NCBI RefSeq assembly: GCF_026571515.1
Contig: NW_026853413.1
Coordinates: forward strand, 62,001-126,000
DNA: 64,000 bases
From: Ruditapes philippinarum
Lineage: Eukaryota
Direction of reading: 5' to 3'
The notes beneath the pieces were generated by a model. It saw only the letters and a program-made list of their open reading frames with translations, had not been told where the DNA came from and searched no databases. Positions 1-55,335 of this stretch are shown here, one piece after another. Each line of letters begins with the position of its first letter. Position 1 is the first letter of the stretch. The translations under genes were made by a program, and so were the position numbers.

Positions 1-3000
1 CTGCTCAGCCAAAATACTTTGTACGGACATGTCACTTGCCAATAGTATCTTCTCATGTCTCTGTAAATAAACAAAGTTGGTGAAAAGTCATAAAAATCAA
101 ATTTGTTTTGAAATAAAGTTTTATCGTCTGGTACGATGACAATTTATTTTATTACCCCTCACTTTTTTCGTAATGCTAATTTCCCATAGGCCTCTGGGAG
201 TTATTTTTACTGTTAATGCAAGTGTACCACGTGACTAAAAATTTTGTACTGTTACATAGGTAACAGTATTTTTTAAGCGGTCACGTGGTCTATTTCCTAA
301 ATAAAATGAAATAAAATTGCCGCCATTTTTTTCTCGATTCATTCTTATTTTCGACGTTAAACCCCGATAGGACATCAATTTCTCCTCTGGAGTCCCTATG
401 ACACTCGTAAAATTTAGTTGTTTGTACCCTGGTGTACTTTTCGCGTATAAAATATCTTTTTGCTCAATAGTCAAAAGTGAAATCCGTTTTCAACGGAAGT
501 GATTGCAATGTAAATAATTATGTGTCAAACTGAAACATGCAGAAGATTTAAGCATGCAACAAAGGATTATTTAACAAATTTAATCAGTGAAAACGTTACA
601 GATATGGTGGACATAGGATATCATCGTTATTTTGTCAAAAACCATGCTAAGAATATATTGGAAACAGAAGGATCAGATTTCACAGATCATAACCGTGTAA
701 ATGGGTTAGTGTTTGTTTCCTAAATAAAACCTAGCTTATTGTATGTTTATGATTTGTAGATATCATCACTTGCTTAAAGAATAAAAGAAAAAGAAAACTT
801 CTCAAGTAGGCCTACAGTAAAGTACACTTAAAACTTAAAAGGTAAGGACAGTTTTGTTATTGTTACTCTTGGTTTATTTTTATTACAGTTAGATTTAGTT
901 GACAATTTCAGATCATCTCAGTATTTTTGTTCGGGATAATAAAATAAATAACACATGGGTTTGTGAGTAACAGTAAAAATATCATCCCTCGTAAAAATAC
1001 TGTTACCCTCGGCTACGCCTCGGGTAACAGTATTTTCCTCGGGATGATATTTTTACTGTCACCCACAAACCCATGTGTTATTTATATAATGTCTTTTCGT
1101 ATCTGGTATGATGACTATTTATTATATCTCATTGTTTCTTGTACGATTACTATTTATTATGTCTTATCGATTCTGGAAAAATGACTATTTTTCATGATCA
1201 TTGAGAAAGAAAATGTTGCAATAATTTTTTTTTCAAATGTAGTATTTTGATAAGATATTTAGTTAATAATGATTGCTACATACTATTTCGCACCCGTTGT
1301 TATTATAGTTATTCCGCATTTTATACATATTATAAATAAATAAATAAATAAGGAACGAATAGTGAAAGCAATAGTTTACAAACCGTGTTAATACTTAATG
1401 TTATGAAATGTATTTTGTTTTATTATTATAAATTATCTGTTTAAATTCGAAGTTTGGAGTGACCTTTTTCAAAAGTTGTGTAAAACATTAACTTACGGCC
1501 TGATTGCATAAAGAGACTGGCATTTAGCGTTTGTGGGTTTCTTTAGCTTTTTTGGTATGTTCCTTGCTTTCATCACCCATTCCCACCTATACAGTGAAAA
1601 AGTATATGTATCTTTAACAAAGTTAGAAATCATAATTATAACGTTTAATTTAGGTCTGTCTAATGAAGCAAGACAATTGCAACATGTATTATGAAACTAG
1701 ATCAATACATTCTGGCAAATGAAACTGTAAAAAATAGTTTGCAGAGTGTTTTACGAAACCAGTCTATGTTGAACCTAAAGAAAGGTTGTTAAAAATATTC
1801 TTTGGCAACAAGGTGTTTTATCATTTAAAAAAGTTCATTACACGTTTTTCTTCTATCACAAAAAGCTAATTTCATTTTTGGGGGAATATGCCCCTCCCCC
1901 TACGAACGGTGAAGACCCGTGGTCTTGGGTAAAAAGGAAAAAAGTTAAAGGGTCGTAATTGTTCTATTTTCGGGAGAAAAAGGAAACTTTTTCCCCCCTT
2001 TTTTCATAGGCGATTAAAAGCTGGCATAGAATTACTTCATCGAAATAAACAAAGTCTTAAAAAAAATGTTAAAATATTATCAATTTCTTTTTAAAGGGTA
2101 CTAGTTAAGTTATAAAAGCTTATAGTGTTAAAAAATAAATTTCTTTATTTTTTAAAACCCCCATTTTGTATAAACAGACTTCTTTAAGTTATTCGGGAAT
2201 TGTACCCTCTAAAAAGAAGGATAGGATGATGTCGATGAGATTTCTAACTTTATAATTATAATTTTATCTTTTATGGAAAAGGACAGTTTCAAGTGTATGG
2301 TTTAATTTTGCATGTTCTCTTTTTCCCTTTTTGATATATACTGTATTTTTACAAACTTGTGTGGTGGGAAATATTGTAATAATTATTGCAGATTTCCCTT
2401 ACCTAAATTAATAAATTTTATATTACAAAGTTTCGCAAATAAGAGATTAGCACAGTTGTATTCTGGAATTTAAATTAAAATGTGATTATCAGTTAGCCAC
2501 GGGGGTTATTCGTGCAAGATGTGAAATATCACGTGATATGTCTGATACACCATTTGCAAGATTGTAAACCGTATATGAATAACGAAAAAATGAACAAAAG
2601 ATAAAGAGTGCGTTGATATTATTTTAGGTAAACATGTAAACAGTGACTCATAAAAAGGTATTTACAATATGTGACAGATAACGACATTTTCATAACGTTA
2701 CAAAACATATTTAACAATCCCGGATCTGCCTTGAGTTTTTTTTCCTATCATTGAAGAAAAAAAAATATTTTAAGTATCTTTGATGTTAAATTAATTAATA
2801 TGCGACTTTTTAACTTAAGATTTTTATAAAAAAGTATTGGTTCTTATCTAGTAATAGTATTTCATATATTTAAATGGATATACAAGACAGCAGGGTGTAT
2901 GTTAATGTCGGATCTAAAGAAGAAATATAACATAAAAATACACTAAAGATACATTTTTAAGTTAACTGCTGTACCAGTTAGATATGTTTTATTTTCTTGA

Positions 3001-3502
3001 TGTAGTTGATTAGTTGCTGTCGTTGCTGCTGTTGCTGTTCAAATCTAGGTTTTAACATGAACTTGAAATATGCTAATTCATTCACCTTAGTCATTGACAT
3101 TGAAAAATAAGCTACGTGTCTTTGCTTACGACAAACAGGCGTTTTATGCTTTACAAAACTTATTGAAAACGTCAACACGAAAACCAGTACATGTTGTGTT
3201 CTTACTACACATGGTTACTTCAATAAATAAAAAGATTTAGAGTTTATAACAAAGAACAGTATCTTGATTCGCTTTATACATATTAAGCCGAAGTTTCGAT
3301 AATAATTTTTCTGATATCAATGGTTAAAAGAAAAAACAAAATAAGGTACAAATTTAGAAATGAAGCTTGATATTTTATATGTTGATGTGAAGAGCTCCAG
3401 TTTTAGATTACAGCTTGAACTAAATAAATTCCTTTACAAAAATGATTTGAACATTCTTTGATTTTTGTTTAAATGATTTTCAATGAAAAAAAAACTTACC
3501 AT
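1..3502 (-). CDS. G1: Spaetzle-like/cystine-knot secreted protein, subfamily A (partial; 3' part lies outside the window)
   Basis: ATG mini-exon 3520-3500 (ttcag|ACAAAAGCGACAAGCAACATG|gtaag). Exon 1586-1497 encodes WEWVMKARNIPKKLKKPTNAKCQSLYAIRP. Exon 60-1 encodes DMRRYYWQVTCPYKVFWLS. All are GT-AG bounded and align to G2/G3. The expected signal-peptide exon (~2170-2400) is only vaguely recognisable, in apparently error-rich sequence. Confidence 0.75.
946..1086. repeat. Long hairpin, probably the end of a non-autonomous element spanning ~145-1086
   Basis: AAATAACACATGGGTTTGTG...CTCGGCTACGCCTCG...CACAAACCCATGTGTTATTT; ~65-bp stem. Confidence 0.7.
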
Positions 3503-3725
3503 GTTGCTTGTCGCTTTTGTCTGAAATATAAAATATATCTGTTTAGTTTAATTTTTATAATTATTCAATTAAATCATAATATATGATATGATAACTTAAT
3601 CAAAATTATACAATAAAGTGCTGATATGTCTAATGCTTACTAAAGTATTAATTCCACAATATGGTAGGAAATGGTAAAATGTACCAGTAATTCCTTCAAT
3701 GACACGGGAAGATCATTGTCGCTCG

Positions 3726-3774
3726 TTTATAAACACCTGTATTGACCGCTAGAAACATAGGTTCGTCCGGGGGT
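3726..3774 (-). promoter_or_regulatory. Putative G1 core promoter: CGAACCT motif + TATA box
   Basis: AGGTTCG on + at 3759-3765 and TATAAA on - at 3731-3726. The same arrangement occurs upstream of G3-G6. Confidence 0.6.
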
Positions 3775-5029: not shown

Positions 5030-5272
5030 CACAATAAAAGCAAATGACGACTTTCCAGCTCAGCTGGTGGAGGAAGACTTTAGGTGCCCATTCGTGCATT
5101 ATTGCACTCACGAGCGATCACCTTAAAAAAGCCATCAACGTTCCGTAAAGCTAGTCGGATAGCTTCCGCACAAAAAAAGAATCAAAAGTCCATGGTGAGA
5201 TTCGAACCTTCAACGATGAGGTGCAAGTTTTTTTTAAATCAACAACCTTAACCACACCGCCGCGGACGCCCT
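5030..5272 (-). mobile_element. tRNA-derived SINE copy
   Basis: Reverse-complement similarity to 8344-8594 (GGGCGTCCGCGGCGGTGTGGTTAAGG head; GGTTCGAATCTC B box). Confidence 0.65.
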
Positions 5273-9516: not shown

Positions 9517-12500
9517 TCACACGGCTCCAATTTGCTGCTTCTGGTAGAAGGGTATCATTTTAGGATCAGTCCTGAACATGTCCCAACAATGCCAACACTC
9601 ACATGTCTGTGGTACTCGTATAGTTACCTGGAAAGGAATATAAATGGCTTTATATAATAAAATATCATTTAATGCAATAAATCAGATTGTTATCCAAAAG
9701 AATATAGTAAATGTGTATTAAATAGTATCCATCAAGTGTATAAATATTATTAAAAATATGATGTGAACAGATATGAATATAAGTCACAATAAATATTTTC
9801 AGTAAGACCATTCATTGTTTGTTATTTCCGTTATTTAAAATAGACTTAACATTATCTATATTTATTCTTATCTGTATCTTATTTTGTTGCGGCCTTAACT
9901 ATCTGTACATAACGACGGCAAACATAAAAAACAGTTTGAAAGCTACAGTGCATATATGACAATTTCATTTTTGAAAACTTTATATTCAATAAATGCTTTG
10001 ATATGATAAATGACACCAGCACAAATTAATTGTCATATTATATTTCCAATCATCAGAACTATCGCGTTAAAGAATGAATGTTACGGTATAATGTTGACTT
10101 GTCTATTTTGTTAAACTAATGTACATATATGAGTTTATATATTGCTTAGCCTATCTCTTTTACTTGTTGCNNNNNNNNNNNNNNNNNNNNNNNNNNNNNN
10201 NNNNNNNNNNNNNNNNNNNNNNNNNNNNNNNNNNNNNNNNNNNNNNNNNNNNNNNNNNNNNNNNNNNNNNNNNNNNNNNNNNNNNNNNNNNNNNNNNNTT
10301 AATTATCGAATTAAAATTCATATACTTAACATAATATTTCAAACAATGAAACTTTACCCATTTAAGACATAAATGTGGGGTTTTACTACAATTCACTTGT
10401 TCCACTTTTCCTCGAACAGTCCTGTAAGTCTTAATACAAAACACAAGGACTCTTTTTGGTATGAAATTATTCTCCAAACAAATAGAGTTGTTCACCTTAC
10501 AGAAAGGTGATCGAAATCTCTGGTCGCAAAAGTGGCTTTAAAAGATACATAAAAGTAAAATATAAATAGACATATAGGTTTCAATATAAAGTATTCACAT
10601 GTCTTTACTTAATATTGATACATAATTACCGTTTGAAATAAAATTTATCCTGGTATAAAGTATTGCAATCCTCGTATGAAATATTTCAATGTTTTAGTTT
10701 TTTACATGTATAAATGACACTTTTCCAAAAAAAAAAATATTTACATTATCAAACTTTAGTATATTCTTGACAAAAATATTAAACCAATCCCTAGAGTTTA
10801 CCATCTTGTTTGGAAAATATTGACGATTGAAGATGTCAAAGATGAGGTTTACTTATTTCATTGTAATCTAATTTTAGAAAAAAAGAGAAACAAACAAATA
10901 AAAAACCATAGTTTTCATTAAAAACTAACAAACCAACGAAAAGCACAATATAATAAAAATTCAGGTTAATTTAAACATGTATCTGTCAGACATGATAACA
11001 CAGAAAAAATGTGGGTTCAGAAAACCGGTACATATTTTTTATCTATCAATGGAGCATCGTTTTATTTTCACATAATAATTGTCCAGGTACAATTCTGAAC
11101 ATTTGTAAAAATAAGAGAGGTTTATCATCCAAATTTGAGAAAATACTGTACAGGTACAGATTAATTTACAAATATATCTTAATTCAAAATTTGTCAAGAA
11201 GAAAACCATTATTTAAGAAGCAGGAAAAAAACTAAAAAAGGATAAAAAATGACACCAGTAGATCTTGAATCAACGCGCCACGTAAACTCTGCATTTGGCA
11301 TCTATTACCTTAATATTGAACAAATGGGACTGTAAGTCTTAACAGTGTTGTTTTTACTAAAATCGTTTCACTTACGATGTACAGTTTACAATTCTGACTT
11401 GTTGTAGACATGGTTGCACGATGTAGCACGTTTCTGTATATCTCAAGTTGGTCCTAAATCTCCATGTAAACTTTCCCAGCCAAAACACTTCATATGGGCA
11501 TGATATCTGCCAATAATACCTCCTCATGTCTCTGTAACATTATTATATACATGAAGTTTAGTTAACAGTGTTTTCACTTTTATCATTAAAGTATTACATA
11601 TGCTAGGTAATGTCATACTGTATGTATGGGTATTGCGTTATGTTCTGTTATTTAATTGTTATTTTTATTACCGCCTCCGATGTATTTGTCCGTCTTTTCG
11701 CTAGCAGCCTTAACGCTGGCCATACATGTACAATTTTCAATGACAAAGTGTCATAATTGGCCAACCATATGTCTCAAATAGAGCTTCATTTTAATGAAAT
11801 AGGACATTTATTTATCAAGATATTGTGTTTTACATATACAAGTACCTACAATCATAGATGTATATAAATAATTGTATGATAATTTAGTCACGCCTGTAAT
11901 GAATTATTGTTCTGAAGTATGGGGATTTCACAAAGCTACTCATATCGAAAGAGCGCATCTTAGTTTTTGCAAGAGATTATTAGGTGTTGAAATAAGTTTT
12001 CAAAATGCATTTGTTTATGGTGAAACCGGAAAAATCTCTTATATTACTCATAGATATTTACATATAATACGGTACTGGTTAAAGTTATGTCAAAGTGATG
12101 ATGTTAAATATGCAAAGAAAATGTACACTGTTTTAAAAAGTGATCTTGAATCACATCCTAATCATATAAGTTGGGTATACTATGTACAAAGGCTATTATC
12201 TATATTAGGATTTTATGATGTTTGGTTAAACCAAGGAGTTGGTGATGTCAATATATTTTTGAATATTTTAAAGACACGATTGTACGATATAATTATACCA
12301 ACAGGACAGGAATGCAAGTTTATAGGCAAGTTTATAGGAATCATTATTATTTTACAGAACAATTTCTTTTTTTGATTGTTAGAATTATTTAAATGTTTTA
12401 ACTGTAGAAAAAAATAGAAAGTCAATGTCTAGATTGAGAGTGTCATCCCATAGGTTAGAAATTGAAACAGGCAGATACCTATAAGCACACCAATTGAACA

Positions 12501-15073
12501 TAGAAAATTTAAATTTTGCAATGCATTAGAGGATGAATATCATTATTGAGTGTACACTTTACGCTGAGCTCAGGCGTCAGTACATAAATAGAAATTACTG
12601 GGTTCATCCAAATTATATTAAATTTGTAGGGGTTATCAATGCCAATGTAGTCGAAATAAAGATGTTAGCAGCTTTTATTTACTATGCATTTGAAAAAAGA
12701 ATATTCCTCCAGTTTAAGAAAGACAAAGAGAAAGAAAGTATAACATGTCATGTATCATACATACGGTTTAATATTGAAGAGCTTTCTGCATATCCCACCT
12801 TTGCTGTTTTTCTTAAACTTTTTGGGGTAATTTCTTGCTTTCTTTACCATCTCAATACTAAAAGATACATTGATACAATAATACAATATGATTTGTAGCT
12901 TACCAGTTGTAGTTAATACTTAGAAGAAACAATAGTAAAACACAACCGGTTAACTACAGTGTTCCGACATATTAATTATAGCTGTATCTGTTTATATTGT
13001 TTTAAATATTTTACGAGTATAAAAAACAAAGAATTATTTACTTTTAGGATTTTACTTACAGTGAAGTCCACATTATTGGACACTAACCACTAACACACAA
13101 TTTAGCCTACGTGAATAAAAATGGTATTGTATCACTGTTGAGATAAGTTTTACTTCTTATTTACATAGTAGTTATTTAGGCCGAATCTTACACAAAGAAA
13201 TTGTCACTCACAGTTCTTGATAGATAAATTCTCCGTCAAAAGACAGAAAGTTAGAGGATTCTGTTGGTAATGGGTAACATTTATCTACACTGTCAGGATC
13301 ATCGTATTTATTGCTCGCTGCTACATCAGACATTGCAGATATATTTGCTGATAATCCGAGAGTAATTATCACAAGCAGAAATGAAATGCCAGCCTGGATT
13401 GAAAAGCAAATAAACAACGAATAACTGAATTTTGTAGAAACAATAGGTAAAAATGCTGACAATAGAAGATCTCTAAAGAAATATAAAGCAAAACAATAAT
13501 ACCAGTAAGTGTGCTCGCAAAAATGTTTATCATAGACAATAAAAATTTCAACATTAAGATGTATTTTATTCTCTACAATAAAAGTATATCACGATATACC
13601 GGGGAAAATATAAGATATTGGCCTTCATATACGTCACTCGATATGCTATAATAATCATTGCTTACAACTACTACAAATTTTGAGTTTTTTTGGGTTTTTG
13701 TGAGGTTTTTTTGTTTTGTTTTTTTTTTTGTTTTTTTTTTTTGGGGGGGGGGGGTTGTTATTGTTTTTTCTTTGGGGGTATTGTTATTATTGTTTTGTTG
13801 TTCTGAAATAAATATTTTGAAACTTTTACTTTATGTGTAAAACAATAATTGTCCTTGTAGACAGGTGATCGGACATTTTTCACTTCACCCATCATTGTTA
13901 TATTTTTCAAGTAAATGAATATCCACATGATTTGCAGTTGCATACGGTGGCATAGAGGTGACATTTGCACTTTTATTTTATCTCGTGGCCACGACTTATT
14001 ATCTTGAGGCCTCAAGATATTATCTCGTGGCCACGACTTATTATCTCGTGGCCACGACTTATTATCTTGTGGCCTCAAGATATTATCTCGTAGCCACGAG
14101 TTATAAACTTGTGGCGACGACTTATTATCTTGTGGCCACGACATATTATCTTGAGGCCACGACTTATTATCTCGTGGCCTCAAGATATTATCTCGTGGCC
14201 ACGACTTATTATCTCGTGGCCACGACTTATTATCTTGTGGCCTCAAGATATTATCTTGTGGCCACGAGTTATTATCTCGTGGCCACGACTTATCATATTG
14301 AGGCCACAACTTACTATATTGAGGCCACGACTTATTATCTCGTGGCCACGAGTTATTATCTTGTGGCCACAACTTATTTCAGCCAATGAAAATGGACGTT
14401 TCATCTTGAACAAAAGTTAATATCACTTATTTAATTGGCTGTAATAAGTCGTGGCCACAAGATGATAAGTCGTGGACACGAAATAATAAGTCGTGGCCAC
14501 AAGATAATAACTCGTGGCCACGAGATAATATCTTGAGGCCACAAGATAATAAGTCGCGGCCACGACATAATATCTTGAGGCCACAATATAATAAGTTGTG
14601 GCCACGAGATAATAAGTCGTGGCCACGAGATAATATCTTGAGGCCACGAGATAATAAGTCGTGGCCACAAGATAATAAGTCGTGGCCACAAGATAATAAC
14701 TCGTGGCCACGAGATAATAAGTCGTGGCCACGAGATAATAAGTCGTGGCCACAAGATAGTAACTCGTGGCCACGAGTCAATATCTTGTGGCCACGAGATA
14801 ATAAGTCGTGGCCACAAGATAATAAGTCGTGGCCACGAGATATTATCTTGAGGCCTCAAGATAATAAGTCGTGGCCACGAGATAAAATAAAACTGCAAAT
14901 GTCACCTCTATGCCACCGTAGTTGCATATGTCAAGTTCTCGTGCCTAGAAATTTATGTGCAAATTAAAGTCGTTATATTACAGGCATGGTTATTTTAGTT
15001 ATTATTTACTTTTTGTGCAAAAGATTTCAACTTACGTGTATTTGTTCTGTAATTATCATCATTATCATTATTA

Positions 15074-15132
<59 letters not shown>

Positions 15133-15163
15133 ATAATTTAGGTATGAACAAAGAACTCACCAT
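9517..15163 (-). CDS. G2: Spaetzle-like/cystine-knot secreted protein, subfamily A, 240 aa, intact
   Basis: Coding exons 15163-15161 (ATG), 13393-13212, 12857-12765, 11531-11376, 10535-10358, 9627-9517; all GT-AG, 723 nt in frame. MAGISFLLVIITLGLSANISAMSDVAASNKYDDPDSVDKCYPLPTESSNFLSFDGEFIYQELIEMVKKARNYPKKFKKNSKGGICRKLFNIKPDMRRYYWQISCPYEVFWLGKFTWRFRTNLRYTETCYIVQPCLQQVRIVNCTSHFCDQRFRSPFCKVNNSICLENNFIPKRVLVFCIKTYRTVRGKVEQVNCSKTPHLCLKWVTIRVPQTCECWHCWDMFRTDPKMIPFYQKQQIGAV*. The gene model is well supported; the family label is inferred from motif spacing. Confidence 0.88.
10171..10298. other. Assembly gap (N run) in the last intron of G2
   Basis: 128 N characters. Confidence 0.99.
11860..12715 (+). 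mobile_element. 5'-truncated non-LTR retrotransposon (LINE ORF2 C-terminus), degenerate, inside a G2 intron, antisense to G2
   Basis: The 11872-12375 translation carries LVTPVMNYCSEVWG..IERAHLSFCKRLLGV..VYGETG..IIRYWLKL. Downstream frames give RLRVSSHRLEIETGRY and CNALEDEY/IIECTLYAELRRQYI. These motifs are typical of the post-RT region of CR1/L2/RTEX-like LINEs. Frameshifted. Confidence 0.85.
13943..14920. mobile_element. Non-autonomous foldback DNA transposon (IS3EU-like) with inverted arrays of 21-bp repeats
   Basis: TIRs TACGGTGGCATAGAGGTGACATTTGCA / TGCAAATGTCACCTCTATGCCACCGTA; 6-bp TSD GTTGCA (13937-13942, 14921-14926). Each arm carries about 20 copies of TTATCTCGTGGCCACGACTTA, in opposite orientations. 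Confidence 0.88.
15052..15130. repeat. (ATT/ATC)n microsatellite
   Basis: Direct inspection; lies 30 bp into the intron after the G2 ATG exon. Confidence 0.95.
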
Positions 15164-23317: not shown

Positions 23318-23723
23318 TGTTGTTTAAGCTCTGAAATAAAATTAAATAATATATGTAAATAATATATTCTCCAAAATCATGTAAACTGATTATTTTGTGC
23401 TACAACTTTTGTTCATGTACCATGATATTGTTTTTCACTTATACTATACAAATGTTTGTAAAATGACTATGAACTAAATGTATACGTCAAAAAATTATCT
23501 ATTTATCTAATAAATCATATAATTTATCATTTTATTTAACAAAACTTTTGTTCACATAGTGCTAATACAGACAGCACTAAATCTTAATTCAAATTTCACT
23601 AATTTTAGGTTTGGTGTGCAAAAGACCTTTGTCTAGGTATATTTTTTTTCGTTAGCTGAAAAAAAACTAATATTTACCTGACCTGAGATTAAGCCAACAT
23701 TACAGATATGACAGTTAACTTTC

Positions 23724-29019: not shown

Positions 29020-29053
<34 letters not shown>

Positions 29054-31810: not shown

Positions 31811-32063
31811 ATTGATTCCTCGTATGATATCTGGAATAGAAAATTTGTGAACAAAATAAATTAATATTCTGAACAAACAATAGCTTCATCCCTCGATTTT
31901 AATATTTCCATAACAAAATATATGCAATTTATCAACTTCATCAAATTTCTTACAGAAAAAGAATTGATCTCTATATATATAAAGAATATTATATTTTACG
32001 AACCTTTTGTTTACCATGTATTTATTAAATAACACATAAAATGGCTTTACATGGCAAGTACGC

Positions 32064-40900: not shown

Positions 40901-43900
40901 CACTGTATATGATATATTGAATATTTTTATGGTAAAGTGAACTGATGTAATTTGTTTTAAATTTGGTGCTTGTATTCCGGTTTGTAATGTTGATAACCAA
41001 ATTTCTACAGACCAAAACGTCACCATGAGAAACTCCTTTGGTAAGTATTTAACAGTATAAGTACGGCAGGTACTATAAGGTTCCTGATATAATGCCTTTG
41101 TTGTTCGGATAAGGAAAATTAAGTGCATAGCTCTGGAGCATAGTCATGTCTGACGGACAATGTGTCAGGGCTTTTTGCAATTACAGGTGCAGCATTTGAA
41201 ATAATCAGATTAAAAAACAAGAATTAAGATCAACAAGGTAAATGCAACGTTCACATGAGTTTTAAACTGAGTTTGAAAACTTTAATTAATTTAATTTCAC
41301 TGTTTCAAAACTTATCATAAATATCCCATGGTTTATTTTTCTAAGCCCATGCTATCTTCTTGCGCTCTTTTTTCATTTCCATCTGCTGGACTTATTAAAC
41401 GAAAATTTGTTCTGCAGTTTTCAGATCAATAGGTGCATTGCTAAGCATACAATTCAAAGACGGAAATACTGTTGTATTTTATTATGATGTCGTAGATTTT
41501 TCTTTTTAGTACTTCATTGATTAAACATTCTGTATTTATAATTGTAAATATAACATGAAACATAAGAAAATATAAATAAAATACTCACGAGTTGTTGATG
41601 TCAGTTAGTTCATCATGTCCGTTAGCAGGACTCCATGGTAGTTCACAGTCTTATTTACATTGGAACTGGTTAAACAAAGCGGAGTCATCAATTGCTGACT
41701 TAACATATGGTCACCTGCAATAACAACAAACTTGGGTTGTAAATAAACATAAACAGTATATATTAGCAACGTTCTAGGACTTTGTAAATATAATTGTTAT
41801 TTATCAAGGGACTTTTATGACAATTAAATGGATTTCAATTGTACAAATGTAAGTACATGTAATAGATTACTAGTTGCTAGGTTAGAGATTTACGTATCTC
41901 TGGCGATCATACATCGATGGATGTACCATAAGTTTTACTTAAAAGATTTACATATTCTGCATTTGTATATACTAGTAATGACCACAATATATCGAAAACA
42001 AATTCTGGCAACATTTTTACCTTTAATTAGTATATCTTCATTTATAAATGCAAAACACAATGTTATAAAGTTACCATTCAGCGGGGAGAGTAGCATTGTC
42101 CCATCTTCTGAAAGGATTAGATGGATTAGGTAATGGTTTTGGACCACACGGAGTGGTGTTGCTGGGATCATCATATACAATCACACCCTGACACCGATAC
42201 ACAGTAGAATTACTATCGTCTTGAACTGTTTGAAAGAAGAAAGTCAATGATAAGGTAAAACTGCTGATTATGTCTTGCAAGTTGACTAGCTGTTTTATTT
42301 TTTCTGTTTGGACATAAATTCCAATCACACTGAGATCAATGAGCCCTTGACTGACGGAAATTTACCAATACAATACGGACATGAAAGCCACTCCGAGGGG
42401 TAGTGTTGCCACGGTCTAAAAGAGGTCACATAATTTTGTTCAGCCTTTGTTACCAAAAACAACTTTATTATTGATAATGCTCTATAGAATAAAAAATGTA
42501 TTTGTAACTACTTTATGAAAAAATGCTCCATTAAAAACATTGTATTTGTTAGTCACTTATAAGAAAAGTAATATTAACGATATAAACAGGCGTTTTAAGA
42601 CAAGGCATTAAAGAGACACCATCGAGCTTTTGGCATAACGGGACGGAAAATAATTTTTATGAGCTTTTTGCATACCGTGTGTTGTAGTTTGGACCACTAA
42701 CTTTAGTGCAAAATTTCAGACACTCACTTACCCCATTTTTTCCAGAATGATCATTTCAATCGTGCACAATTGATAGATCCCTAATCTGACTGTTCGTTTG
42801 AATAATAATACATTTAACCACAAACATTGATATATGCTCTTTTGTTAACAAATAGGCTGTGGTGAAAATCTTATTGTATCCACTAATCTGATCATTAGTA
42901 TTGGAAAGATCAGGGATCTATGCATTACCCAAACAATTATCTTAAGCATTTTTGTTTCAAATTTGGAGTATGCAAAAGGTATACTTATATATTGAAGTTA
43001 TTCATTTAATTGCAGCCAGTTTTGACCAGTTTCAGCAGAGTATTTTGCTAAATATCAGGGTAATTGAGATACCTAACATGTTTGTGTTTCTTTTATATAC
43101 TTGTTCATGCAGGTAAACTCATTTCGTAGGATAATATACACCAATGTAAAAATACTTGTTTTGCTACACTACCCTAACCTTACTTGGGAACAGTTATGAT
43201 CACAAAATATTTCTATTGAAAGATGAGCGTTGTTTAATTCGAGTATAATGCACCAGCTAATCTACATAATTCGTGCAATGATATTTTCATTTTGATCTGT
43301 CTCGAGCTGAAAAAAATGTCACTCGCTAGTTTGTTAAGTATATTAATATGTTGTCAAGTTGAATTTTAAAAGATAAAGGAAGGATTTGCTTTAGTTTCAT
43401 TTTAGATAGATATGACAAGAGTTACTGGCAGTAAATTGCAAATAAACGCCGCTTTATAAGGTTGCAAAATACTGTTTCAGTCCCAGAGTTTACTATCAAT
43501 AAATGATGAGAAAAAAAGACAAGACTTTATTAAAGCTTTTGAGGTAAACTATTTAAGCAATTTGTAACTTTTTAACATAAGATTTTATTAAAACGACGTT
43601 GTTAACATTTTAGTATTTCATTTACAAAATTACGGTGTAATAAAAAAGACAACATAAACACATCAAAGATACATGTTAAGCTTAATGCTGGATAGTTAAT
43701 TTTCATTATTGTAAATGTTGTTCTCTTTTATTCTGTTTTTTTTTAATGTTAAAGAGGATTTCGCTAGTTTATTCGCCCTAATCATTCGCACTAGGCTTAC
43801 GACAGACAGTCGTTTGAATAAAACGTTTGACGAAAACTAAATTTAAAAATGTTAACATGAATATAGTATATTTAGTACATTTTATGTTCTTACCATATAC

Positions 43901-44155
43901 AGATGGATATTTTAATAATAGTAATAGTGTGTGATAGTTTCTGTGTTTGTACTCTAAATATTTAGCTGAACTTTCGGTGAATACGTTTTCTGGTAAAAGT
44001 GTTAGATTTCATTATATTATATAAAATAATGTAAGGAATTAATTTAAAACTGAAGCTCGATGGTCCATTGTTTGAGGTTCAAACTAAGACTTCAAATGTT
44101 TGATTTATTTAACAAATATAATTTGAATAGGTTTTTCAATAAAAGCACTTACCAT
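37973..44155 (-). pseudogene. G5: pseudogenised, chimeric copy of the Spaetzle-like gene (coding exons are G6-like)
   Basis: Exons 44155-44153; 42225-42075 (151 nt vs 194 nt in G6, frameshift, TGA at 42183-42181); 41714-41589 (in-frame TGA 41713-41711 and TAA 41653-41651); 40692-40546; 40085-38902 (split by a transposon at 38933-39930); 38062-37973 (VTISVPQCCECWSCRGAH...). Confidence 0.9.
38933..39930. mobile_element. Tc1/mariner-like non-autonomous element inserted in G5 exon 5
   Basis: Imperfect TIRs CG(T/A)GGGTTGTCCCAA..GTGACAA; TA duplicated on both sides. The paralogous site in G6 (51209-51210) has a single TA. Possible HTH remnant (RKTRIGRP) on the minus strand near 39340. Confidence 0.88.
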
Positions 44156-44428
44156 AATGCTTGCTGCTTTTGTCTGGAATATAAAACACATCTATTTTGT
44201 TTCGTTTATATTTACAATTGACAAGTTATTAGGGAAATAAAACAATAAATAATTATCCAATATGTATGAGATAACTTTACATAATACTTTTATAATAAGA
44301 AATTGTTACGCATAATTTTTTAATAATATATCAAATAAGTAAAGTATTAAATTCCTCAGAAAGGTAAACAAAATTGTTTATTTTACCGTTAATTGCTTTA
44401 ATAACACAACGAAGATAAATTTCGTCTG

Positions 44429-48540: not shown

Positions 48541-50535
48541 TAATAGCCTAGTGATGGCATCCAGCTTTAAGTATAAACGTTGAAGACAACACTAACGTAA
48601 ATAAAATAGTCATACGTTATGTAATTATAATGTTAAGCTGCATGTATGAGTCGTTTTTGTTTCGTATTGCAAAATGATTCATAGTATTATACATGTACTG
48701 ACTGATCCTATTTCTGTTTGGTGTCCTTCTGGGTTCCCTGCCGGTGGCCCTGTGTTACTGGGTCGCGTGGGGCAAGTGTTTATTAACCGCCGCCCTTCCT
48801 TGATGATTTTGTTTTTCAATATTTTAATCTAATCTAAATGTTGAAGCTTACTTAACCTTCATTTATGAAGAAAATATATTTTCATTTCATTTCAACGAGC
48901 AAAGTTATCACTGATCAGTATTTCGAGTTCTTTATGTTTTTCGGCAAGAAGGTAACTATGATATCAATACCATGTATACTTAAACATTAAACAGAAGGAG
49001 TATTCATATTAATAACCAATTCATCCAGGGATTATTAATTTGCTACAGTACCACAATAGAAAGTTTATTCCCAACTGAGATATCTTTTTAGCTTTTCTTT
49101 GGAAAGAAGACTGAATGTATTCATTCCTCTATAATAATATATATCATACATTTGTTATGTATGTATATTTGGCAATAAATCAGACTGATAATTGTTGCAT
49201 TCTTACTTTTTTTAAAGCTGAAATATAGATTAAATTTGATAGTTTTATCTTTTTTTCAAAAATTACACATGATTTGGGGGGGTTTTGTTTTTCTAATAGG
49301 ATTGTTTCTATAGATTTAAAACAACGATTAGATTTTGATATCATAATTATTAACGGGTATACATTTTTTTACAGATATTTTTGACTGCATCAACATAACT
49401 ATCAATTGCAGTGTCACTTTTATGCAGAATTTTTTGACATCTCTGGGGACCTTTTGTGGCTATATTTATTGTGTAAAGAAATTAATATATGTGTGTATAT
49501 TCCCTCATTCTTCGTTACAAAATTAAAGGGGGAATTAAAAATTTTTCTATGTAATTATCTATTTTATACTCCAATCCAAATTCACCCCTTCACGATGTAG
49601 GCTTCATTGCTTAACAAATTTTTTTTAATGAATCATACACCCATTCTTTACAATTGTCTACATGCATACCCGTTACCCTTAAACCACGTTTTTTCTATTT
49701 TAATCCAACCTTAATGAAGTTTAAAATTTTATTAATGATGGTTATACCCCGTGTCCACGGGTCCCGAAAAAATGAAAGGACAAAGGGCCCATGCCTTCCT
49801 CGAGCGAGAAAACTGGCACATTTTTATAATTTTTCCAATATTATGATAGTTTTTTTAAAATACGTTACAAATTTAAAAAAATTTAGAAAAACCGGATTCA
49901 AAAAAGTTGTATGGAAACCCATTTGAAAAAAAAAACAAGGGGTTTTTTGCGGGATACCAAAGTTTCCAATCAGTTAAAGTATCAGTTTAAGGATAATGTG
50001 TTTGTTTGCACCAAGAAAAATCATTTTTAATGATTTTAATGAGGCAACTAATAAAACGACACTGCTTTATAATTTCATTATTTACAAAAATTACTTCAAA
50101 ATAAAAGTAAAAAAAAACCTAAAACCATAACCATTTTTAAAAGGATAAAATCAAATCTTATTTTATTTTTTCCTGTTTTTGTATTTTTTCTTCCCGAGCC
50201 CAGTGATTTGGAATTTAAAAACCCCTGTTCCCTACCGATAGTGGATTAGAAAACGATAGGATTGGATTCTCTCCTTTAAAAAAATAGCCCCAAGGGAAAG
50301 TCGTAGGGAATTTTTCAAAAATGCACGTACAAACCCGATTTTTGCACCAGTAAACCATTTAAATTTGAGAAAGCTACTAACTGTATTCTTAATTTGAATA
50401 TCTGATGACATGTCAGTCCGTCCAAAAGAAGAAATTCAAAACAAATAATAAATTCACTCTAAATCAACAATTATATTTTTTATTATTTTTATATTGCTTG
50501 CATGTATGACAATGCTTTGATAGCAATAAATATAG

Positions 50536-53500
50536 TTATCCACGAGTGTTGATTGGTTTTGCATCTCTACCTGGTTTTTCAGCTGGGGCTGGTTTTACAT
50601 GTTCAACTGGTTTTTCGTCGGTTAGTTGATGTATATGATGAGCACCTCGACATGACCAACATTCACAACATTGTGGTACAGATATAGTTACCTGAAATAA
50701 TCAACGCCATGATAAATAGATCAACGTTTAAATAAATAACAATCTTCACTTGTGTTTGAACAAATATAATAACACATATACAAACAATTCTATTTATTAT
50801 AATAATATAACTATAACCATGGAAAAAGTATATGCAAAATTATAATATGAGAAATTAAAAATGTTGCACTTTTCTTAAAAATTATCTAAAAGTAAAATGA
50901 AACATATTTAATGGTGTTTCACAAACTATTAATTTGAAAATAGACAAGAACCCAAAACGTTTATCTATGTCGTCGACAAATTCAGTTGTTATTCTTAAAA
51001 TAAGTAAAAAAAGAAGGTGACTGAGAAAAAAGTATATATGCTGGTCATACTTCGACACTAAGTATAATCGTGACAAGAGAAAAACATTTGCTCTACAACT
51101 TATAATTGTATCCCCCCCACCCCCGGATATGTAATTACAACAGAATATATCGCAGCTTCATAAATTACAAGATACTTACCAGTTTGAGACAACGTTTTGG
51201 AAACCTCTTACAATCCACTCGTTCCCACTTTCCATTTTCCTGCCAGTATGTGGATGGACAGAAGACGTAAATGTCCTTATGTTGACGAAAATTAGTCTCG
51301 CAACAAACAGAGTTAGCTATCTTCAGATTATCACTACAGTGTGTCCGTGTCATACAATTCGTTCTTTGTAAAGAAATATTGTATTGTAGTATAAAAGTAG
51401 TGTTAAAACAACGCAACGTGACGTCGTTTGCGTAATACAAGCATAACGTCAAAACGCAGTATAAAAATGATGTAGATGCTTTAAACCGTTCTTATTTTAG
51501 ATATGTGATAAATAGAATATTATTGCCAGGGGCTTTCATGATATATAATATAATTCATTCAGCTGGTTCAATAAATTTTCTATTGAACCTACATGCATGC
51601 ATCCAATACAATTGTTTAATGTCAATAATTGTATAATAAAAAAATCTGAAAATTTTCAGACGTGAAATTATAGAATTTAACCTGTTTATAGGGCAGTATA
51701 AACCGATGACAACATGGGCAAAGCTGGTCGAAATAAATGTAAATATCATTTTACTTATCCTAAAAATAAACTTACGTGGTACATTTGACAATCCGGACTT
51801 GTTGACAACATGGCCAGAGTAAAAAACAGGTCTCCCTTAAACGGGTTGAACCTGGTATTTCCCACGTAAAGCTGCCAAGCCACGACGCCTCATACGGACA
51901 TGATGATTGCCAGAAAAAGAAAATTTTCTTGTCTAGCCTGAAATGTTAACAATGGTTCATAGATCTTTTCCTTGAACTGCTGTGATTTTTGTGTGACTGT
52001 GTTTGAATTGATAAAAATAATCATATAATAAAAGCAAACATCTATTTCAGGCTCATATAGATTTTGTTGTTTTATACGATATATAATTAACACTCCATTC
52101 TTTATTCTCTAGTCGTTATCTCATAGTTTTATATGATATAGTGAACACTTCATAATATGAGCCGCGTCACGACAAAACCAGCATAATGGGTTTGCAACCA
52201 ACATGGATCCAGACCAGCCTGCGCACCCGCGCAGTCTGATCAGGATCCATGTTGTTCGCTATCAGTTGCTCTACTTGTAATAGAGTTGGTAAGCGAACAG
52301 CATGGATCCTGATCAGACTGCGCGGATGCACAGGCTGGTCTGGATCCATGTTGGTCGCAAGCCCATTATGTTGGTTTTGTCGTGACGCGGCTCATATGTT
52401 CTCTTGTCATTATATCGTAGTTTTTTCTATAATAAAATAAACTTTTCATACTATATTCTCTCGTCATTGTATCTTAGTTTTATAAGTAAACTTGAGTACA
52501 ATATCAAACACCAGAATTAAAGTTGTTTTTCAAATTTTTTTCTGAAATTAACATTTCATTAGCAGGAGAAATGTTTTGTCCTTTCATTACAGAGATGTTC
52601 GCAATATAACAGTTGTCACTGCTGTCTTCTATTTGCAAATAACTTCATGGATTACAACACATTGCTGTTAGAAGTAATTTGTTTAAATATGTTACAAATG
52701 ATAAATAATTTGAAGTCAAGATTTTAACCATCCTGTACTCCTTTGTTTCGAGAAAAACATGTCTGCATTTGTCAGTCAGAATCTATATTATACTTGTTGC
52801 TAGTTTACCGGTTTGTATTGGAGATACATAGGTATTTTCATTCATTATAACATATGTACAAAAGGTGCATTTAAATAAAAATAATGTCACCGCTTATATA
52901 AAGAAGAAGAAGAATCTTATATTGCACATTAACTCTCAAAAGAGTTATCTACAAGCTTTCATTTGATATATACAATTACATGTATGCATAAGTAAATAAA
53001 ATATTACATAGCAAGATGTGAAAGTCATACAGCAAGCATTTCAACAGTAAAAGTACGGCAGCTATTAAAAGGTTCTTGATATAATGATTTTATTATTCGG
53101 ATATAGAAATTAATTAAATTGCAAAGCTCTGAAAACTAATAACAGCTCACGGGCAAAGTATCAGGGTTGTTTGCAATTACCGGTTCAACATGTGAAATGA
53201 TTAGATTAAACCGAGTTTAAAACCTTGTTGTTTTCATTATTCATCTCCACTGCTCTTTAAAATAATCTCTTAACTAAGTTTTCTTCATGCTGTCATTTTT
53301 ATTTCCGGCTGCCTCTCGTAGCCTTACATTGAACGAAATTTCTATATCAAAGGAGCATTGTCAGGCATAAAGACCAAAGTTGGTGGTAACCCTGTGGTAT
53401 TTTATCATGTTGCCGTAGAGTTTCTATTAACTACTTTATTTATAAAATTCCTGACATGTTTTATATATATATCTTTTTGTTTTGTTATTATTTAAGGGTT

Positions 53501-55335
53501 GAAATTTACAAATTACTGTATAATTTAATGAATTATACATTTGTAAATCAAACAATTTATCAGAAGTAAAACTCACGATTTGGTGATGTCATGTTCATCA
53601 TGTTCGTTGGCAGGGCTCCATGGTGGTTCACAGCCTTCACTACGTGGGAACTGGGTAAACCAAGCAGAATCGTCACTTGCTAACGTAACATGTGGCCACC
53701 TAACAACAAGCATGGGTTGTAAATAAACTTAACAGTATAAAACAGCAATGTTCTTGAGCTTTGTAAATATAATTTTTATTTTAAAGATGAATTTGATTAA
53801 TGTTTAATGGATTTCAAGTGTACAAATGTTAGTAAAAGATAACTCGTTGTAGATTTTACGTATCCATATAGCTATCTTACATTGATGGACCATAGGCAAA
53901 CACATACTGCCATTGCTTATACTAGTTATGATTATAAAACAATGTATAGTAAAACAAATTTTTGCAACATTTTTACTTTTTAAATTAGCATATCTTGTTT
54001 TATAAATGCAAAACACAGCATTATGTAATTACCATTCAGCGGATAGTGTAGCATTGTCCCAGTTTATGAAAGGATTAGATGGATTAGGTAATGGTTTTGG
54101 ACCACACGGAGTGGTGTTGCTAGGATCCACATATACAATCGCACCCTTTTCGTCTGCGGCGGTTTCTGCTTCCGACTGACAACGACACACAACTAGATTC
54201 ACAAGTACGATTACAATAGTCTTGAACTGTTTTAAAAAAGAAAATCAATGATTTGGTAAAACCGCTGATTATGTCTTACAAATTAACTAGCTTTATTATT
54301 TTTTTGAGGGGTGGGGTTGGGGGAGGATCAAAACCATACATTCTAAGATCAGTGTGCATAACGTTTGCTTCCTTGACTGACGTTAATTTACCGATACAAT
54401 ACGGCGAGGGTAAGTGTGTCCACTGACTTATATAGGCCACATAAGCTAACCAACAAACTATTTTCATTGATAATGCTATGTATATAATTATGTTTTTGTG
54501 GCTACAATTGGATATATAATGTTGAATTATGAAATTAACAAATGTTGCTGTGTTAATGATAAAATTTATCAGATGTAACCAAAGAAATAAGCATTGTTTT
54601 ATGTTTTATCTTTGAATGATCTAACTATATTGAAATGTTCATAGTTCAGCTATCCAAAATTGTAATGATGTAACTGATGTCCTGAAAGCATTCATAAATT
54701 CTCCCCATGCATAGTAATGGAGTTACTATATTATAAGTTAATGCGCCTCAAAATGGTTTACTCTTATATGATAAACAGTCATGTTGTTGAAATGAAATGA
54801 GCCGCGTCACGACAAAACCAACAAAGTGCGCGCAGTCTGATCAGGATCCATGCTGTTCGCTTACAAAGTCTATATATATCAAGTAGAGAAACTGATAGCG
54901 AACAGCATGGATCCTGATCAGACTGCGCGGATGCGCAGGCTGGTCTGGATCCATGCTGTTCGCAAACCCATTATGTTGGTTTTGTCGTGACGCGGCTCAA
55001 ATCTATATTATAAGGTCATACAGATATTGTCGATTTTAACGGTTGCTGCAATTAAAGGGAGATAATTAACAAATCATTTTCATAAATGTTTTGACTATTC
55101 TGCAACAGAATGGAATGTATTTCATTTTTTAAGTAAACTATAATCAATAAAAGCAATTATCAATAAATAATAACAATCTTGTATGTTTATGTGTATTTTT
55201 CTAAACGGAATCCGTATATTTACTTTATCCTGTACTTTGTTGTAAATTGTTTAACAATTAATTTGATTTCATGCTTAACATCAGAAAGATATCGTTATCA
55301 CTAAAATTTCTTACCATTTTGATACCGTGTGCCAT
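50536..55335 (-). CDS. G6: Spaetzle-like/cystine-knot secreted protein, subfamily B, ~273-279 aa, intact
   Basis: Exons 55335-55315 (MAHGIKM), 54226-54033 (FKTIVIVLVNLVVCRCQ...PCGPKP...AEW), 53699-53577, 51937-51776 (LDKKIFFFWQSSCPYEASWLGSF...ETCFLLWPCCQQVRIVKCT), 51363-51180 (TNCMTRTHC...VCCETNFRQHKDIYVFCP...DCKRFPKRCLKL), 50691-50536 (VTISVPQCCECWSCRGAHHIHQLTDEKPVEHVKPAPAEKPGRDAKPINTRG*). GT-AG, 840 nt in frame. Confidence 0.88.
52159..52393. mobile_element. Palindromic MITE (Sola-like), copy 1
   Basis: GAGCCGCGTCACGACAAAACC...GGTTTTGTCGTGACGCGGCTC, about 100-bp arms; 4-bp TSD ATAT. Confidence 0.88.
54799..54998. mobile_element. Palindromic MITE (Sola-like), copy 2 (left arm internally deleted)
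   Basis: Same termini as copy 1; 4-bp TSD AAAT. Confidence 0.88.

What the first reader, a model, noticed from the sequence alone, without database searches (positions are those of the whole stretch)
1..55335. Tandem array of at least six genes for a secreted Spaetzle/cystine-knot-like cytokine family, largely invisible in the ORF track
Seen: six minus-strand paralogues share one exon design (ATG mini-exon; signal peptide + DP..C..P exon; pro-exon; WQ..CPY..WL..F...ETC....PC.QQVRIV.C exon; C..C..NS[VI]C.E..F...[VA]FC...C....CLK exon; VTI.VPQ[TC]CECW.C exon) with intron phases 0,2,2,2,0. Four have complete open frames. Established: Spaetzle-family Toll ligands are signal peptide + prodomain + cystine knot with the pattern C-P ... 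Q-x-V-x-x-x-C ... C ... C ... P-x-C-C-x-C. Inference: six of these cysteines (CPY, V[NK]C, the next C, [VI]C.E, CEC) form the knot, and the 9-12 additional cysteines define a distinct, more disulfide-rich subfamily. It looks like a lineage-expanded ligand repertoire, possibly matching the expanded Toll-like receptors of bivalves. A structural or extracellular-matrix role cannot be excluded.
Basis: partly seen in the sequence, partly recalled or inferred. Interest (0 to 1): 0.92.

Follow-up and report, generated by a model that had tools for sequence, protein, structure and literature searches.

The report
Clam cystine-knot cytokine-like gene array
A Manila clam locus holds six old tandem copies (four intact) of a barely annotated gene for a secreted, cysteine-rich protein. 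It is predicted, weakly but consistently, to fold and pair like NGF/IL-17-type cystine-knot signalling proteins, and it does not qualify as a Spaetzle family member.

Summary
Window 1-55338 (Ruditapes philippinarum, contig C1900) holds six minus-strand paralogues with one exon design, canonical AG/GT borders and intron phases 0,2,2,2,0. These are the only copies in the 1.4-Gb genome. G2, G3, G4 and G6 have complete reading frames. G5 is a pseudogene with three lesions. G1 has no detectable signal-peptide exon, and its last exons lie left of the window. Spliced transcript contigs from three studies reproduce every G6 junction, including the 24-nt ATG mini-exon. The N gap lies in a G2 intron.

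RefSeq has only two 5'-truncated "uncharacterized" models. Relatives were found only in Mercenaria, Mya, Dreissena and one unnamed transcriptome.

Spaetzle membership fails. There is no PF16077 hit, profile comparison with the clam's own canonical Spaetzle genes (a separate five-copy array) gives probability 0.07%, and Spaetzle ranks low structurally.

The broader reading holds weakly. Two AlphaFold models (pLDDT about 65) have almost only cystine-knot growth factors as nearest solved folds (NGF, IL-17, PDGF, sclerostin, coagulogen; Z no higher than 4.3). Language-model features point the same way, and a homodimer test passed (0.37 against 0.00 for controls). Receptor and function are unknown.

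The scan flagged other Spaetzle-like clusters elsewhere in this genome.

The parts
50475..55338 (-). G6, intact gene (279 aa), RNA-verified. Exons: e1 55338-55315 (ATG at 55335), e2 54226-54033, e3 53699-53577, e4 51937-51776, e5 51363-51180, e6 50691-50536 (stop), 3'UTR to at least 50475.
   Evidence: Borders. Every junction is reproduced by spliced contigs of runs X1, X2 and X11. Exons e3-e6 equal RefSeq XP_060580013.1 = P0001.
37973..44173 (-). G5, pseudogene. e1 44173-44153, e2 42225-42075 (frameshift), e3 41714-41589 (TGA, TAA), e4 40692-40546 (open), e5 from 40085 (10-bp deletion, donor lost), e6 38062-37973 (open).
   Evidence: Its upstream DNA resembles G1's and G2's upstream DNA.
28398..31830 (-). 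G4, intact reading frame (246 aa). e1 31830-31808 (ATG 31810-31808), e2 31572-31373, e3 31009-30884, e4 30483-30325, e5 29733-29544, e6 28460-28398.
   Evidence: Splice sites are canonical. No RNA was laid on this gene.
18464..23330 (-). G3, intact reading frame (about 245 aa). e1 is uncertain (candidates ending at 23309 or 22136), e2 21809-21619, e3 21315-21223, e4 20871-20716, e5 19038-18858, e6 18574-18464.
9517..15182 (-). G2, intact reading frame (240 aa). e1 about 15182-15161 (ATG 15163-15161), e2 13393-13212, e3 12857-12765, e4 11531-11376, e5 10535-10358, e6 9627-9517.
10171..10298 (.). Assembly gap (128 N) inside G2's intron between e5 and e6.
   Evidence: The e5 donor is at 10358/10357 and the e6 acceptor at 9628/9627, so no coding base is affected.
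1..3520 (-). G1, 5' part. e1 candidate 3520-3500, no e2 found, e3 1586-1497, e4 60 to beyond the window start. The rest of e4, plus e5 and e6, lie 95-1220 nt left of the window (locus L008).
   Evidence: Exons e3(Met)-e6 equal RefSeq XP_060580006.1 = P0002.

Best explanation
The locus is a complete, ancient tandem array of a small gene family known so far only from venerid and myid clams (Neoheterodontei). Each intact gene encodes a 240-280 aa secreted protein in four parts. A signal peptide is split by a phase-0 intron directly after the ATG. An N-terminal segment of about 60 aa carries one conserved cysteine. A variable linker exon, basic in G1-G3 and acidic in G4-G6, carries another conserved cysteine. 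A C-terminal domain of about 125 aa, spread over three exons, carries 13-16 cysteines. That domain most likely adopts the elongated beta-hairpin fold of NGF/IL-17/Spaetzle-type cystine-knot cytokines, with extra disulfides, and forms a symmetric homodimer through the knot end. The most likely role is an extracellular signalling ligand, or a ligand trap. Shown here: the genes, their splicing, transcription of G6, the narrow distribution, purifying selection, and the absence of any Pfam family. Inferred here: secretion (from hydrophobic N-termini), fold, dimer, knot wiring and function. It is a new sequence family within a known fold class and not a member of the Spaetzle family.
For: Gene structure and copy number rest. 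N-terminal hydropathy of 2.8-3.3 is. An exhaustive HMMER scan of 1.84 billion representatives with the e4 profile found five proteins: two are G6 and G1, and the others come from Mya arenaria, Dreissena polymorpha and one unnamed transcriptome. A further search added Mercenaria. All named species are Neoheterodontei. Paralogues are 35-63% identical, with pS 0.70-0.87 and dN/dS about 0.11-0.21 where it can be estimated. AlphaFold model of P0006: pLDDT 66, pTM 0.62, long strands at 161-178 and 202-217. Model of P0001 (=G6): pLDDT 64.5, with core blocks at 83-96. Foldseek tops are PDGF, sclerostin, IL-17, noggin and norrin. In the unbiased VIA-align search of 48,161 chains, model 1 gave coagulogen Z 4.0 (132 aligned), NGF Z 3.8 (rmsd 3.6, 87 aligned), IL-17A 3.7 and noggin 3.6. 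Model 2 gave sclerostin 4.3, NGF 4.2 (rmsd 3.7, 81 aligned), IL-17A 4.1, and about 20 of the top 25 rows were cystine-knot factors. All 50 top rows of the second look were IL-17, neurotrophins, noggin or sclerostin. The aligned ranges put the C-P-Y cysteine on NGF Cys15 and the C-E-C pair on NGF Cys108/110. This is range arithmetic using NGF numbering from general knowledge. ESM Atlas features gave Spaetzle/Noggin/NGF/IL-17 clusters as nearest, at 0.90-0.91 for P0006 and 0.82-0.89 for the G6 core. Homodimer test on P0006 residues 40-230: ipSAE 0.37 against a best control of 0.00, chain pLDDT 70-72, runs agreeing in at least 70% of contacts, and a symmetric interface at 98-107, 138-151, 162-169 and 211-219. 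In calibration that mark was reached by 21 of 30 proteins solved as pairs and 0 of 23 solved as single chains. On eukaryotes it was 17 of 29 and 0 of 30, and only 1 of 7 for proteins with no older solved relative.
Against: No sequence method links the family to any known family. Pfam gave nothing at E up to 10, and a profile search of PDB sequences gave nothing. All structural Z scores are below 5, and the tool states that models without a clear match typically reach Z 7-8 by common arrangement alone. The alignments are shallow (6-17 rows, some of them exon fragments), mean pLDDT is about 65, and the other four models of each run scored lower. Predictors may be drawn to cystine-knot shapes by cysteine spacing alone, and the dimer pass may be recalled from solved cytokine dimers. 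Disulfide connectivity was not readable. There is no tissue or induction data.
Confidence: 0.6

Rival explanations
1. The genes are true Spaetzle-family Toll ligands, a disulfide-rich subfamily activated by cleavage of the prodomain and matched to expanded clam Toll-like receptors.
For: The architecture is signal peptide, N-terminal region and C-terminal cysteine-rich domain. A C-P motif sits at the first knot position and C-x-C at the last. The nearest named language-model clusters include 'Spaetzle domain-containing protein'. A basic residue sits 3-4 positions before the linker cysteine in all copies. A homodimer is predicted.
Against: PF16077 does not match any exon or any full-length homologue at E up to 10. 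The same genome has five canonical PF16077 genes with a single-exon knot domain on another contig, and hhalign between the two families gives probability 0.07%. Solved Spaetzle aligns poorly (Z 2.4 and 2.6, rmsd 8.4-8.7 A), below NGF, IL-17, sclerostin and coagulogen. No conserved cleavage motif exists: the linker is basic in G1-G3 and acidic in G4/G6.
Confidence: 0.12
2. The proteins are secreted antagonists of the DAN/sclerostin/noggin type, which trap BMP or Wnt pathway ligands or receptors and do not signal themselves.
For: Sclerostin is the top unbiased hit for the G6 model (Z 4.3). Gremlin-1, NBL1, noggin and norrin are also listed. Noggin-bearing clusters are among the nearest by features.
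Against: These alignments have large rmsd (5.4-7.1 A), against 3.6-3.7 A for NGF. No DAN or Noggin Pfam match was found. The Z values are tied within 1 unit with the cytokine hits.
Confidence: 0.1
3. The proteins are coagulogen-like: a clottable or matrix-forming protein whose N-terminal segment and helix cover the knot domain until a protease releases them.
For: Horseshoe-crab coagulogen is the top unbiased hit for the full-length model and the only hit covering the N-terminal part (Z 4.0, 132 of 175 residues, model range 40-218). The model packs a strand (48-51) and helices (58-81) with pLDDT 58-85 next to the core. Size and cysteine number are similar (general knowledge: coagulogen has 175 aa and 16 half-cystines).
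Against: Rmsd is 6.2 A and Z is tied with NGF. The match is not reproduced with the second model, which lacks the N-terminal part. No Coagulin Pfam hit was found. The basic sites are not conserved between the two subtypes.
Confidence: 0.08
4. The proteins are cysteine-rich secreted proteins with some other or new fold (for example structural, antimicrobial or reproductive), and the cystine-knot look comes from predictors working on shallow alignments.
For: Z stays below 5 in every search, under the tool's own background for unmatched models. Mean pLDDT is about 65. No sequence-level link exists. Language-model scores at or below 0.91 are reached by 4-10% of shuffled proteins.
Against: Two different paralogues, two predictors (AlphaFold2 and ESMFold2) and two kinds of search all converge on one fold class, which makes up a tiny share of the PDB. 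The first and last knot cysteines fall on NGF's by alignment range.
Confidence: 0.2

Closest known systems
Neurotrophins (NGF, BDNF, NT-3; Pfam PF00243)
   Same: They give the best-fitting solved fold for both models (Z 3.8 and 4.2, rmsd 3.6-3.7 A, 81-87 residues). They are made with a signal peptide and an N-terminal pro-region. A symmetric homodimer is predicted here too. The first cysteine and the C-x-C pair align with NGF Cys15 and Cys108/110.
   Different: No sequence match to PF00243. The knot domain is about 20 residues longer, with 7-10 extra cysteines. Two further conserved cysteines sit in the N-terminal part. No conserved dibasic cleavage site. The domain is split over three exons.
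Spaetzle (Pfam PF16077)
   Same: Secreted protein with an N-terminal region and a C-terminal cystine-knot-like domain. C-P at the first and C-x-C at the last knot position. It is among the nearest language-model clusters.
   Different: No HMM or profile-profile similarity, even to the clam's own Spaetzle genes. Poor structural fit (rmsd above 8 A). 15-18 cysteines, against about 7 in the clam's Spaetzle knot domain. Different exon structure.
IL-17 family (Pfam PF06083)
   Same: Tied with NGF in structural rank (Z 3.7-4.1). Mollusc IL-17-bearing clusters appear among the feature neighbours.
   Different: No PF06083 match. Rmsd 4.4-6.3 A. IL-17 keeps only two of the three knot disulfides (general knowledge), whereas this family is far richer in cysteine.
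Coagulogen (Pfam PF02035)
   Same: Similar size and cysteine load. It is the only solved chain that also aligns with the N-terminal strand and helix of the full-length model.
   Different: No sequence match. Weak fit (rmsd 6.2 A). Known only from horseshoe crabs. No evidence of clotting.
DAN/sclerostin/noggin antagonists
   Same: Top or near-top structural hits for the G6 model.
   Different: No Pfam match and large rmsd.

Membership tests
Spaetzle (PF16077) | Match to the family HMM at or above its gathering score (27 bits) | tested here: not met
   No hit at E up to 10 for ten exon translations or five full-length/partial family proteins. The genome search with PF16077 found five other genes above the cut-off and none in this locus.
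Spaetzle (PF16077) | Profile-level similarity to bona fide Spaetzle knot domains of the same species | tested here: not met
   hhalign of A5 against A6 gave probability 0.07%, E 0.7, 10 columns.
Spaetzle (PF16077) | Signal peptide, N-terminal pro-region and C-terminal knot domain | tested here: met
   Joined reading frames and hydropathy, and the secondary structure of the models. No SignalP was available; secretion is judged from hydrophobic N-termini.
Spaetzle (PF16077) | Solved Spaetzle is among the closest structures | tested here: not met
   3e07_A ranked 21st (Z 2.4, rmsd 8.7) and 33rd (Z 2.6, rmsd 8.4). It was absent from the top 50 of the second look.
Spaetzle (PF16077) | Activating cleavage after a basic residue just before the knot domain | tested here: inconclusive
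   A K/R lies 3-4 residues before the linker cysteine in all copies, and Mercenaria has R-x-K-R. The surrounding sequence is not conserved between subtypes.
Spaetzle (PF16077) | Binds and activates a Toll receptor | not testable with these tools
   No receptor candidate was chosen and no assay was possible.
Cystine-knot growth-factor superfamily (NGF, IL-17, PDGF, TGF-beta, DAN, noggin, coagulogen) | Elongated fold of paired long beta-hairpins, with nearest solved structures in this superfamily | tested here: met
   Met only weakly. Two models and five fold searches gave superfamily members in nearly all top ranks, but Z stayed at or below 4.3 and Foldseek E at or above 0.03.
Cystine-knot growth-factor superfamily (NGF, IL-17, PDGF, TGF-beta, DAN, noggin, coagulogen) | Six knot cysteines wired C1-C4, C2-C5, C3-C6 | not testable with these tools
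   Model coordinates are not returned. Only C1 and the C5-x-C6 pair could be placed on NGF by alignment ranges.
Cystine-knot growth-factor superfamily (NGF, IL-17, PDGF, TGF-beta, DAN, noggin, coagulogen) | Dimer as the working unit | tested here: met
   The prediction test passed: score 0.37 against a best control of 0.00. This is model support only and may come from memory of solved cytokine dimers. Type A proteins have an odd number (15) of mature cysteines.
Coagulogen (PF02035) | Match to the family HMM | tested here: not met
   No Pfam hit at E up to 10.
Coagulogen (PF02035) | Whole-chain structural likeness including the N-terminal chain and helix | tested here: inconclusive
   Top hit for the full-length model (Z 4.0, rmsd 6.2, 132 aligned). 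It is not listed for the N-truncated G6 model.

The most novel reading that the evidence does not exclude
The array encodes a previously unrecognised class of clam cystine-knot cytokines. In this reading the N-terminal segment is tethered by disulfides to the knot domain, in the manner of coagulogen or a pro-neurotrophin, and is released or rearranged by a protease. The two subtypes (basic and acidic linkers) would signal as dimers through one of the expanded bivalve receptor sets (TLR, IL-17R or p75/Trk-like).
Probability: 0.15. Interest if true: 0.75.

Novelty: new variant of a known kind. Interest (0 to 1): 0.5.

Why it matters
Bivalves have greatly expanded innate immune receptor families, but few of their extracellular ligands are known. 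This work gives corrected, RNA-supported full-length gene models for a secreted family that public annotation shows only as two truncated "uncharacterized" proteins. It places the family, tentatively, in the fold class of NGF, IL-17 and Spaetzle. It also shows that the family is distinct from the clam's canonical Spaetzle genes. If the fold and a receptor are confirmed, this would add a lineage-restricted cytokine or growth-factor family in commercially important clams. It would also be a useful case of how far cystine-knot sequences can drift beyond HMM detection. If the fold is not confirmed, it remains a well-defined orphan secreted family with four testable intact genes.

Tried and rejected
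- Pfam on ten exon translations and on five database homologues gave nothing meaningful; the best were chance hits at E 0.17-0.3.
- A profile search of PDB sequences with A5 gave 0 hits at E up to 10.
- The search for homologous proteins with the single Mya protein found only itself. With alignment A4 it found six proteins.
- The search for a G1 exon 2, by tblastn with six e2/N-terminal queries and by a local e2 profile over 1400-9400, found nothing.
- G6's mini-exon has no DNA-level match at the other genes. Their mini-exons were found by the shared 'acceptor, about 20 nt, ATG, GT' pattern. G3's remains ambiguous.
- Exon-3 fragments misaligned in A7 and were dropped for A8.
- Rfam found no RNA family in the window.
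- Ten other ORFs of 84-167 aa in the window had no Pfam domain.
- Literature searches by locus names and by Spaetzle/bivalve terms found no description of this family.
Searches used single exons by reference, or database proteins (P0001-P0006). Exons were joined only inside local scripts, from window coordinates, for frame checks, cysteine counts, dN/dS and a tree. As a result, HHpred-style or Pfam searches with the full-length G2, G3, G4 and G6 products were left out.

Full report
**What is in the sequence.** The window is Ruditapes philippinarum (Manila clam) contig C1900:62001-126000. It is AT-rich (GC 0.32) and has one N run at 10171-10298.

Motif scans of the six-frame translation, and an all-against-all comparison of stop-free segments, show six minus-strand copies of each of three strongly conserved coding blocks, spaced about 10 kb apart. 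Reading the flanks gives canonical AG acceptors and GT donors at every border, and the phase series 0,2,2,2,0.

Profiles of the e4 and e5 exons were searched over the whole 1.4-Gb assembly. They hit only these six places (E 1e-21 to 1e-31), and the next best match had E 0.49. The array is therefore the entire family in this genome, and the pattern is far beyond chance.

**State of the six genes.** I number them G1 to G6 from left to right; transcription runs right to left.

| Gene | State | Evidence |
|---|---|---|
| G2 (240 aa) | Complete reading frame, strongly hydrophobic N-terminus | |
| G3 (about 245 aa) | Complete reading frame, strongly hydrophobic N-terminus; e1 ambiguous | |
| G4 (246 aa) | Complete reading frame, strongly hydrophobic N-terminus | |
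| G6 (279 aa) | Complete reading frame, RNA-verified | |
| G5 | Pseudogene | |
| G1 | e3-e6 open, no e2 found | |

- **G5.** A 43-nt shortening of e2 shifts the frame into a TGA. Exon 3 carries an in-frame TGA and TAA. Exon 5 has a 10-bp deletion and has lost its donor.
- **G1.** Exons e3-e6 are open, but the end of e4 and all of e5 and e6 lie up to 1220 nt left of the window. No exon 2 (signal peptide plus the D-P..C..P block) could be found between its ATG mini-exon and e3, or anywhere in 1400-9400. G1 is either 5'-disabled or uses an exon I cannot recognise.
- **The gap.** It begins 59 nt downstream of G2's e5 donor, inside the e5/e6 intron, so it interrupts no coding sequence. Exon 6 follows in the right order, strand and phase. 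Continuity across the gap cannot be proven.

**Transcription.** One reads call was available and I spent it on G6 (window 50400-56300). Assembled transcript contigs of 905, 860 and 878 nt, from three runs in three different studies, lie on the minus strand. They skip exactly the five predicted introns, with joints 50691|51180, 51363|51776, 51937|53577, 53699|54033 and 54226|55315, each with GT..AG ends.

It is a 24-nt internal exon (55338-55315) with its own acceptor. Two contigs carry further unplaced 5' letters, so at least one 5'UTR exon lies upstream. The other genes show the same 'acceptor, about 20 nt, ATG, GT' design. Contigs show presence and splicing only, not level, tissue or strand-specific starts.

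**Annotation and distribution.** An exhaustive HMMER scan of 1.84 billion representative proteins with the e4 profile returned five proteins.

- Two are RefSeq 'uncharacterized protein' models of G6 (LOC132736816) and G1 (LOC132736810). Both start at internal methionines and lack the signal peptide.
- The others come from Mya arenaria, Dreissena polymorpha and an unnamed transcriptome assembly.
- A profile-seeded search added Mercenaria mercenaria.

All named species belong to Neoheterodontei. G2, G3 and G4 have no protein in these databases, so 'largely invisible' is fair. No paper in the held library mentions these loci.

**Age of the array.** Paralogues are 35-63% identical. Synonymous differences are saturated (pS 0.70-0.87). 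Where dS can be estimated, dN/dS is about 0.11-0.21. A tree groups G1-G3 (support 97/98) and G4+G6 (100/99). This is an old array under purifying selection and not a recent expansion.

**Is it Spaetzle?** On sequence, no.

- PF16077, like every other Pfam family, fails to match any exon or any full-length homologue at E up to 10.
- A profile search of PDB sequences is blank.
- The clam genome does have canonical Spaetzle genes. Five tandem copies lie on contig C4951, each above the Pfam cut-off and each with the knot domain in a single exon.
- A profile-profile comparison between that family and this one gives probability 0.07%.

**Is it a cystine-knot cytokine?** Probably, on weak but convergent evidence.

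- **Models.** AlphaFold2 on the full-length Mercenaria protein, with a six-row alignment, gave pLDDT 66 and pTM 0.62. On G6's database protein, with a 17-row alignment that adds single-exon translations from the window, it gave pLDDT 64.5 with core blocks at 83-96. Both models show the same series of long paired strands.
- **Foldseek.** Both models list PDGF, sclerostin, IL-17, noggin, norrin, VEGF and neurotrophin-3 at the top, with E 0.03-0.6.
- **Unbiased VIA-align search (48,161 chains).** Model 1 gave coagulogen Z 4.0, NGF Z 3.8 (rmsd 3.6 A, 87 residues), IL-17A 3.7 and noggin 3.6. Model 2 gave sclerostin 4.3, NGF 4.2 (rmsd 3.7 A, 81 residues) and IL-17A 4.1. About 20 of its top 25 rows are cystine-knot factors.
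- **Second look.** All 50 top rows are IL-17, neurotrophins, noggin or sclerostin. Spaetzle itself ranks 21st and 33rd, with rmsd above 8 A.
- **Knot positions.** The aligned ranges place the C-P-Y cysteine on NGF Cys15 and the C-E-C pair on NGF Cys108/110. The middle three positions and the actual wiring cannot be checked, because coordinates are not returned.
- **Language-model features.** For the Mercenaria protein and for the G6 core, the nearest clusters carry Spaetzle, Noggin, NGF or IL-17 domains (0.90-0.91 and 0.82-0.89).
- **Homodimer test.** On Mercenaria residues 40-230 the test passed, with score 0.37 against a best control of 0.00. Chain pLDDT was 70-72 and the runs agreed in at least 70% of contacts. 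The interface is symmetric and built from the segments around C1 and the C-E-C strand. In calibration the mark was reached by 21 of 30 proteins solved as pairs and 0 of 23 solved as single chains. On eukaryotes it was 17 of 29 and 0 of 30, but only 1 of 7 for proteins with no older solved relative, so the pass may reflect memory of known cytokine dimers.

**Caveats on the fold.** Every Z is below 5, under the tool's own background for unmatched models. The alignments are shallow. Cysteine spacing may bias the predictors.

**Most likely mechanism.** The product is a secreted protein. Its N-terminal part is a strand and helices with pLDDT 58-85 in the full-length model, and it holds two conserved cysteines. 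That part sits against a disulfide-rich, NGF/IL-17-like knot domain that dimerises through the knot end and acts outside the cell as a ligand or a ligand trap.

Mature cysteine counts are 15 in G2, G3 and Mercenaria, 17 in G4 and 18 in G6. The odd number in type A is compatible with one intermolecular bond. A basic residue always lies 3-4 positions before the linker cysteine, and Mercenaria has R-x-K-R there. The linker is basic in G1-G3 and acidic in G4/G6, so regulated cleavage is only a suggestion. Receptor, tissue and induction are unknown.

**Verdict.**

- This is a new sequence family within a known fold class, restricted as far as seen to venerid and myid clams.
- The scan's notes mention other Spaetzle-like clusters on other pieces of this genome. 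Those are separate DNA and I did not check them. They may correspond to the C4951 array found.

Noticed in passing
G000:C4951:198206-248996 (loci L009-L013): Five tandem canonical Spaetzle-domain genes (PF16077, 35-40 bits, above the cut-off), 80-82% identical to one another. Each has its knot domain in one exon. They are unrelated in sequence to the family in this window.
   Followed up: partly
window 13978-14378 and 14442-14885: Two adjacent arrays of a 21-bp tandem repeat (about 19 and 21 copies) that are reverse complements of each other. They form a large palindromic satellite inside G2's first intron and create long spurious ORFs on both strands.
   Followed up: no
window 52124-52437, 54782-55036, 57249-57562: Three copies of a repeat of about 300 bp, partly self-complementary. 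Word depth in every RNA run laid is in the thousands to tens of thousands, with many rearranged joints. It looks like a very abundant, transcribed interspersed repeat sitting in G6's introns and upstream region.
   Followed up: no
window 44133-45803 against 3477-4758; 46648-47260 against 16154-16691: The DNA upstream of pseudogene G5 resembles G1's mini-exon and promoter region (71-79% identity), and further out it resembles G2's upstream region (77-86%). Its coding exons are G6-like.
   Followed up: partly
window 53699-53577 and 1586-1497 (RefSeq models P0001, P0002): Both public protein models of this family in the clam start at internal or intronic methionines and miss the signal-peptide exons. 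RNA contigs show the true 5' exons for G6.
   Followed up: yes
window 61175-61463 and 63376-63782: AT-rich minisatellites (26-bp unit with 11 copies; 16/64-bp unit with about 22 copies) to the right of the array. No gene was recognised between 55400 and 64000.
   Followed up: no
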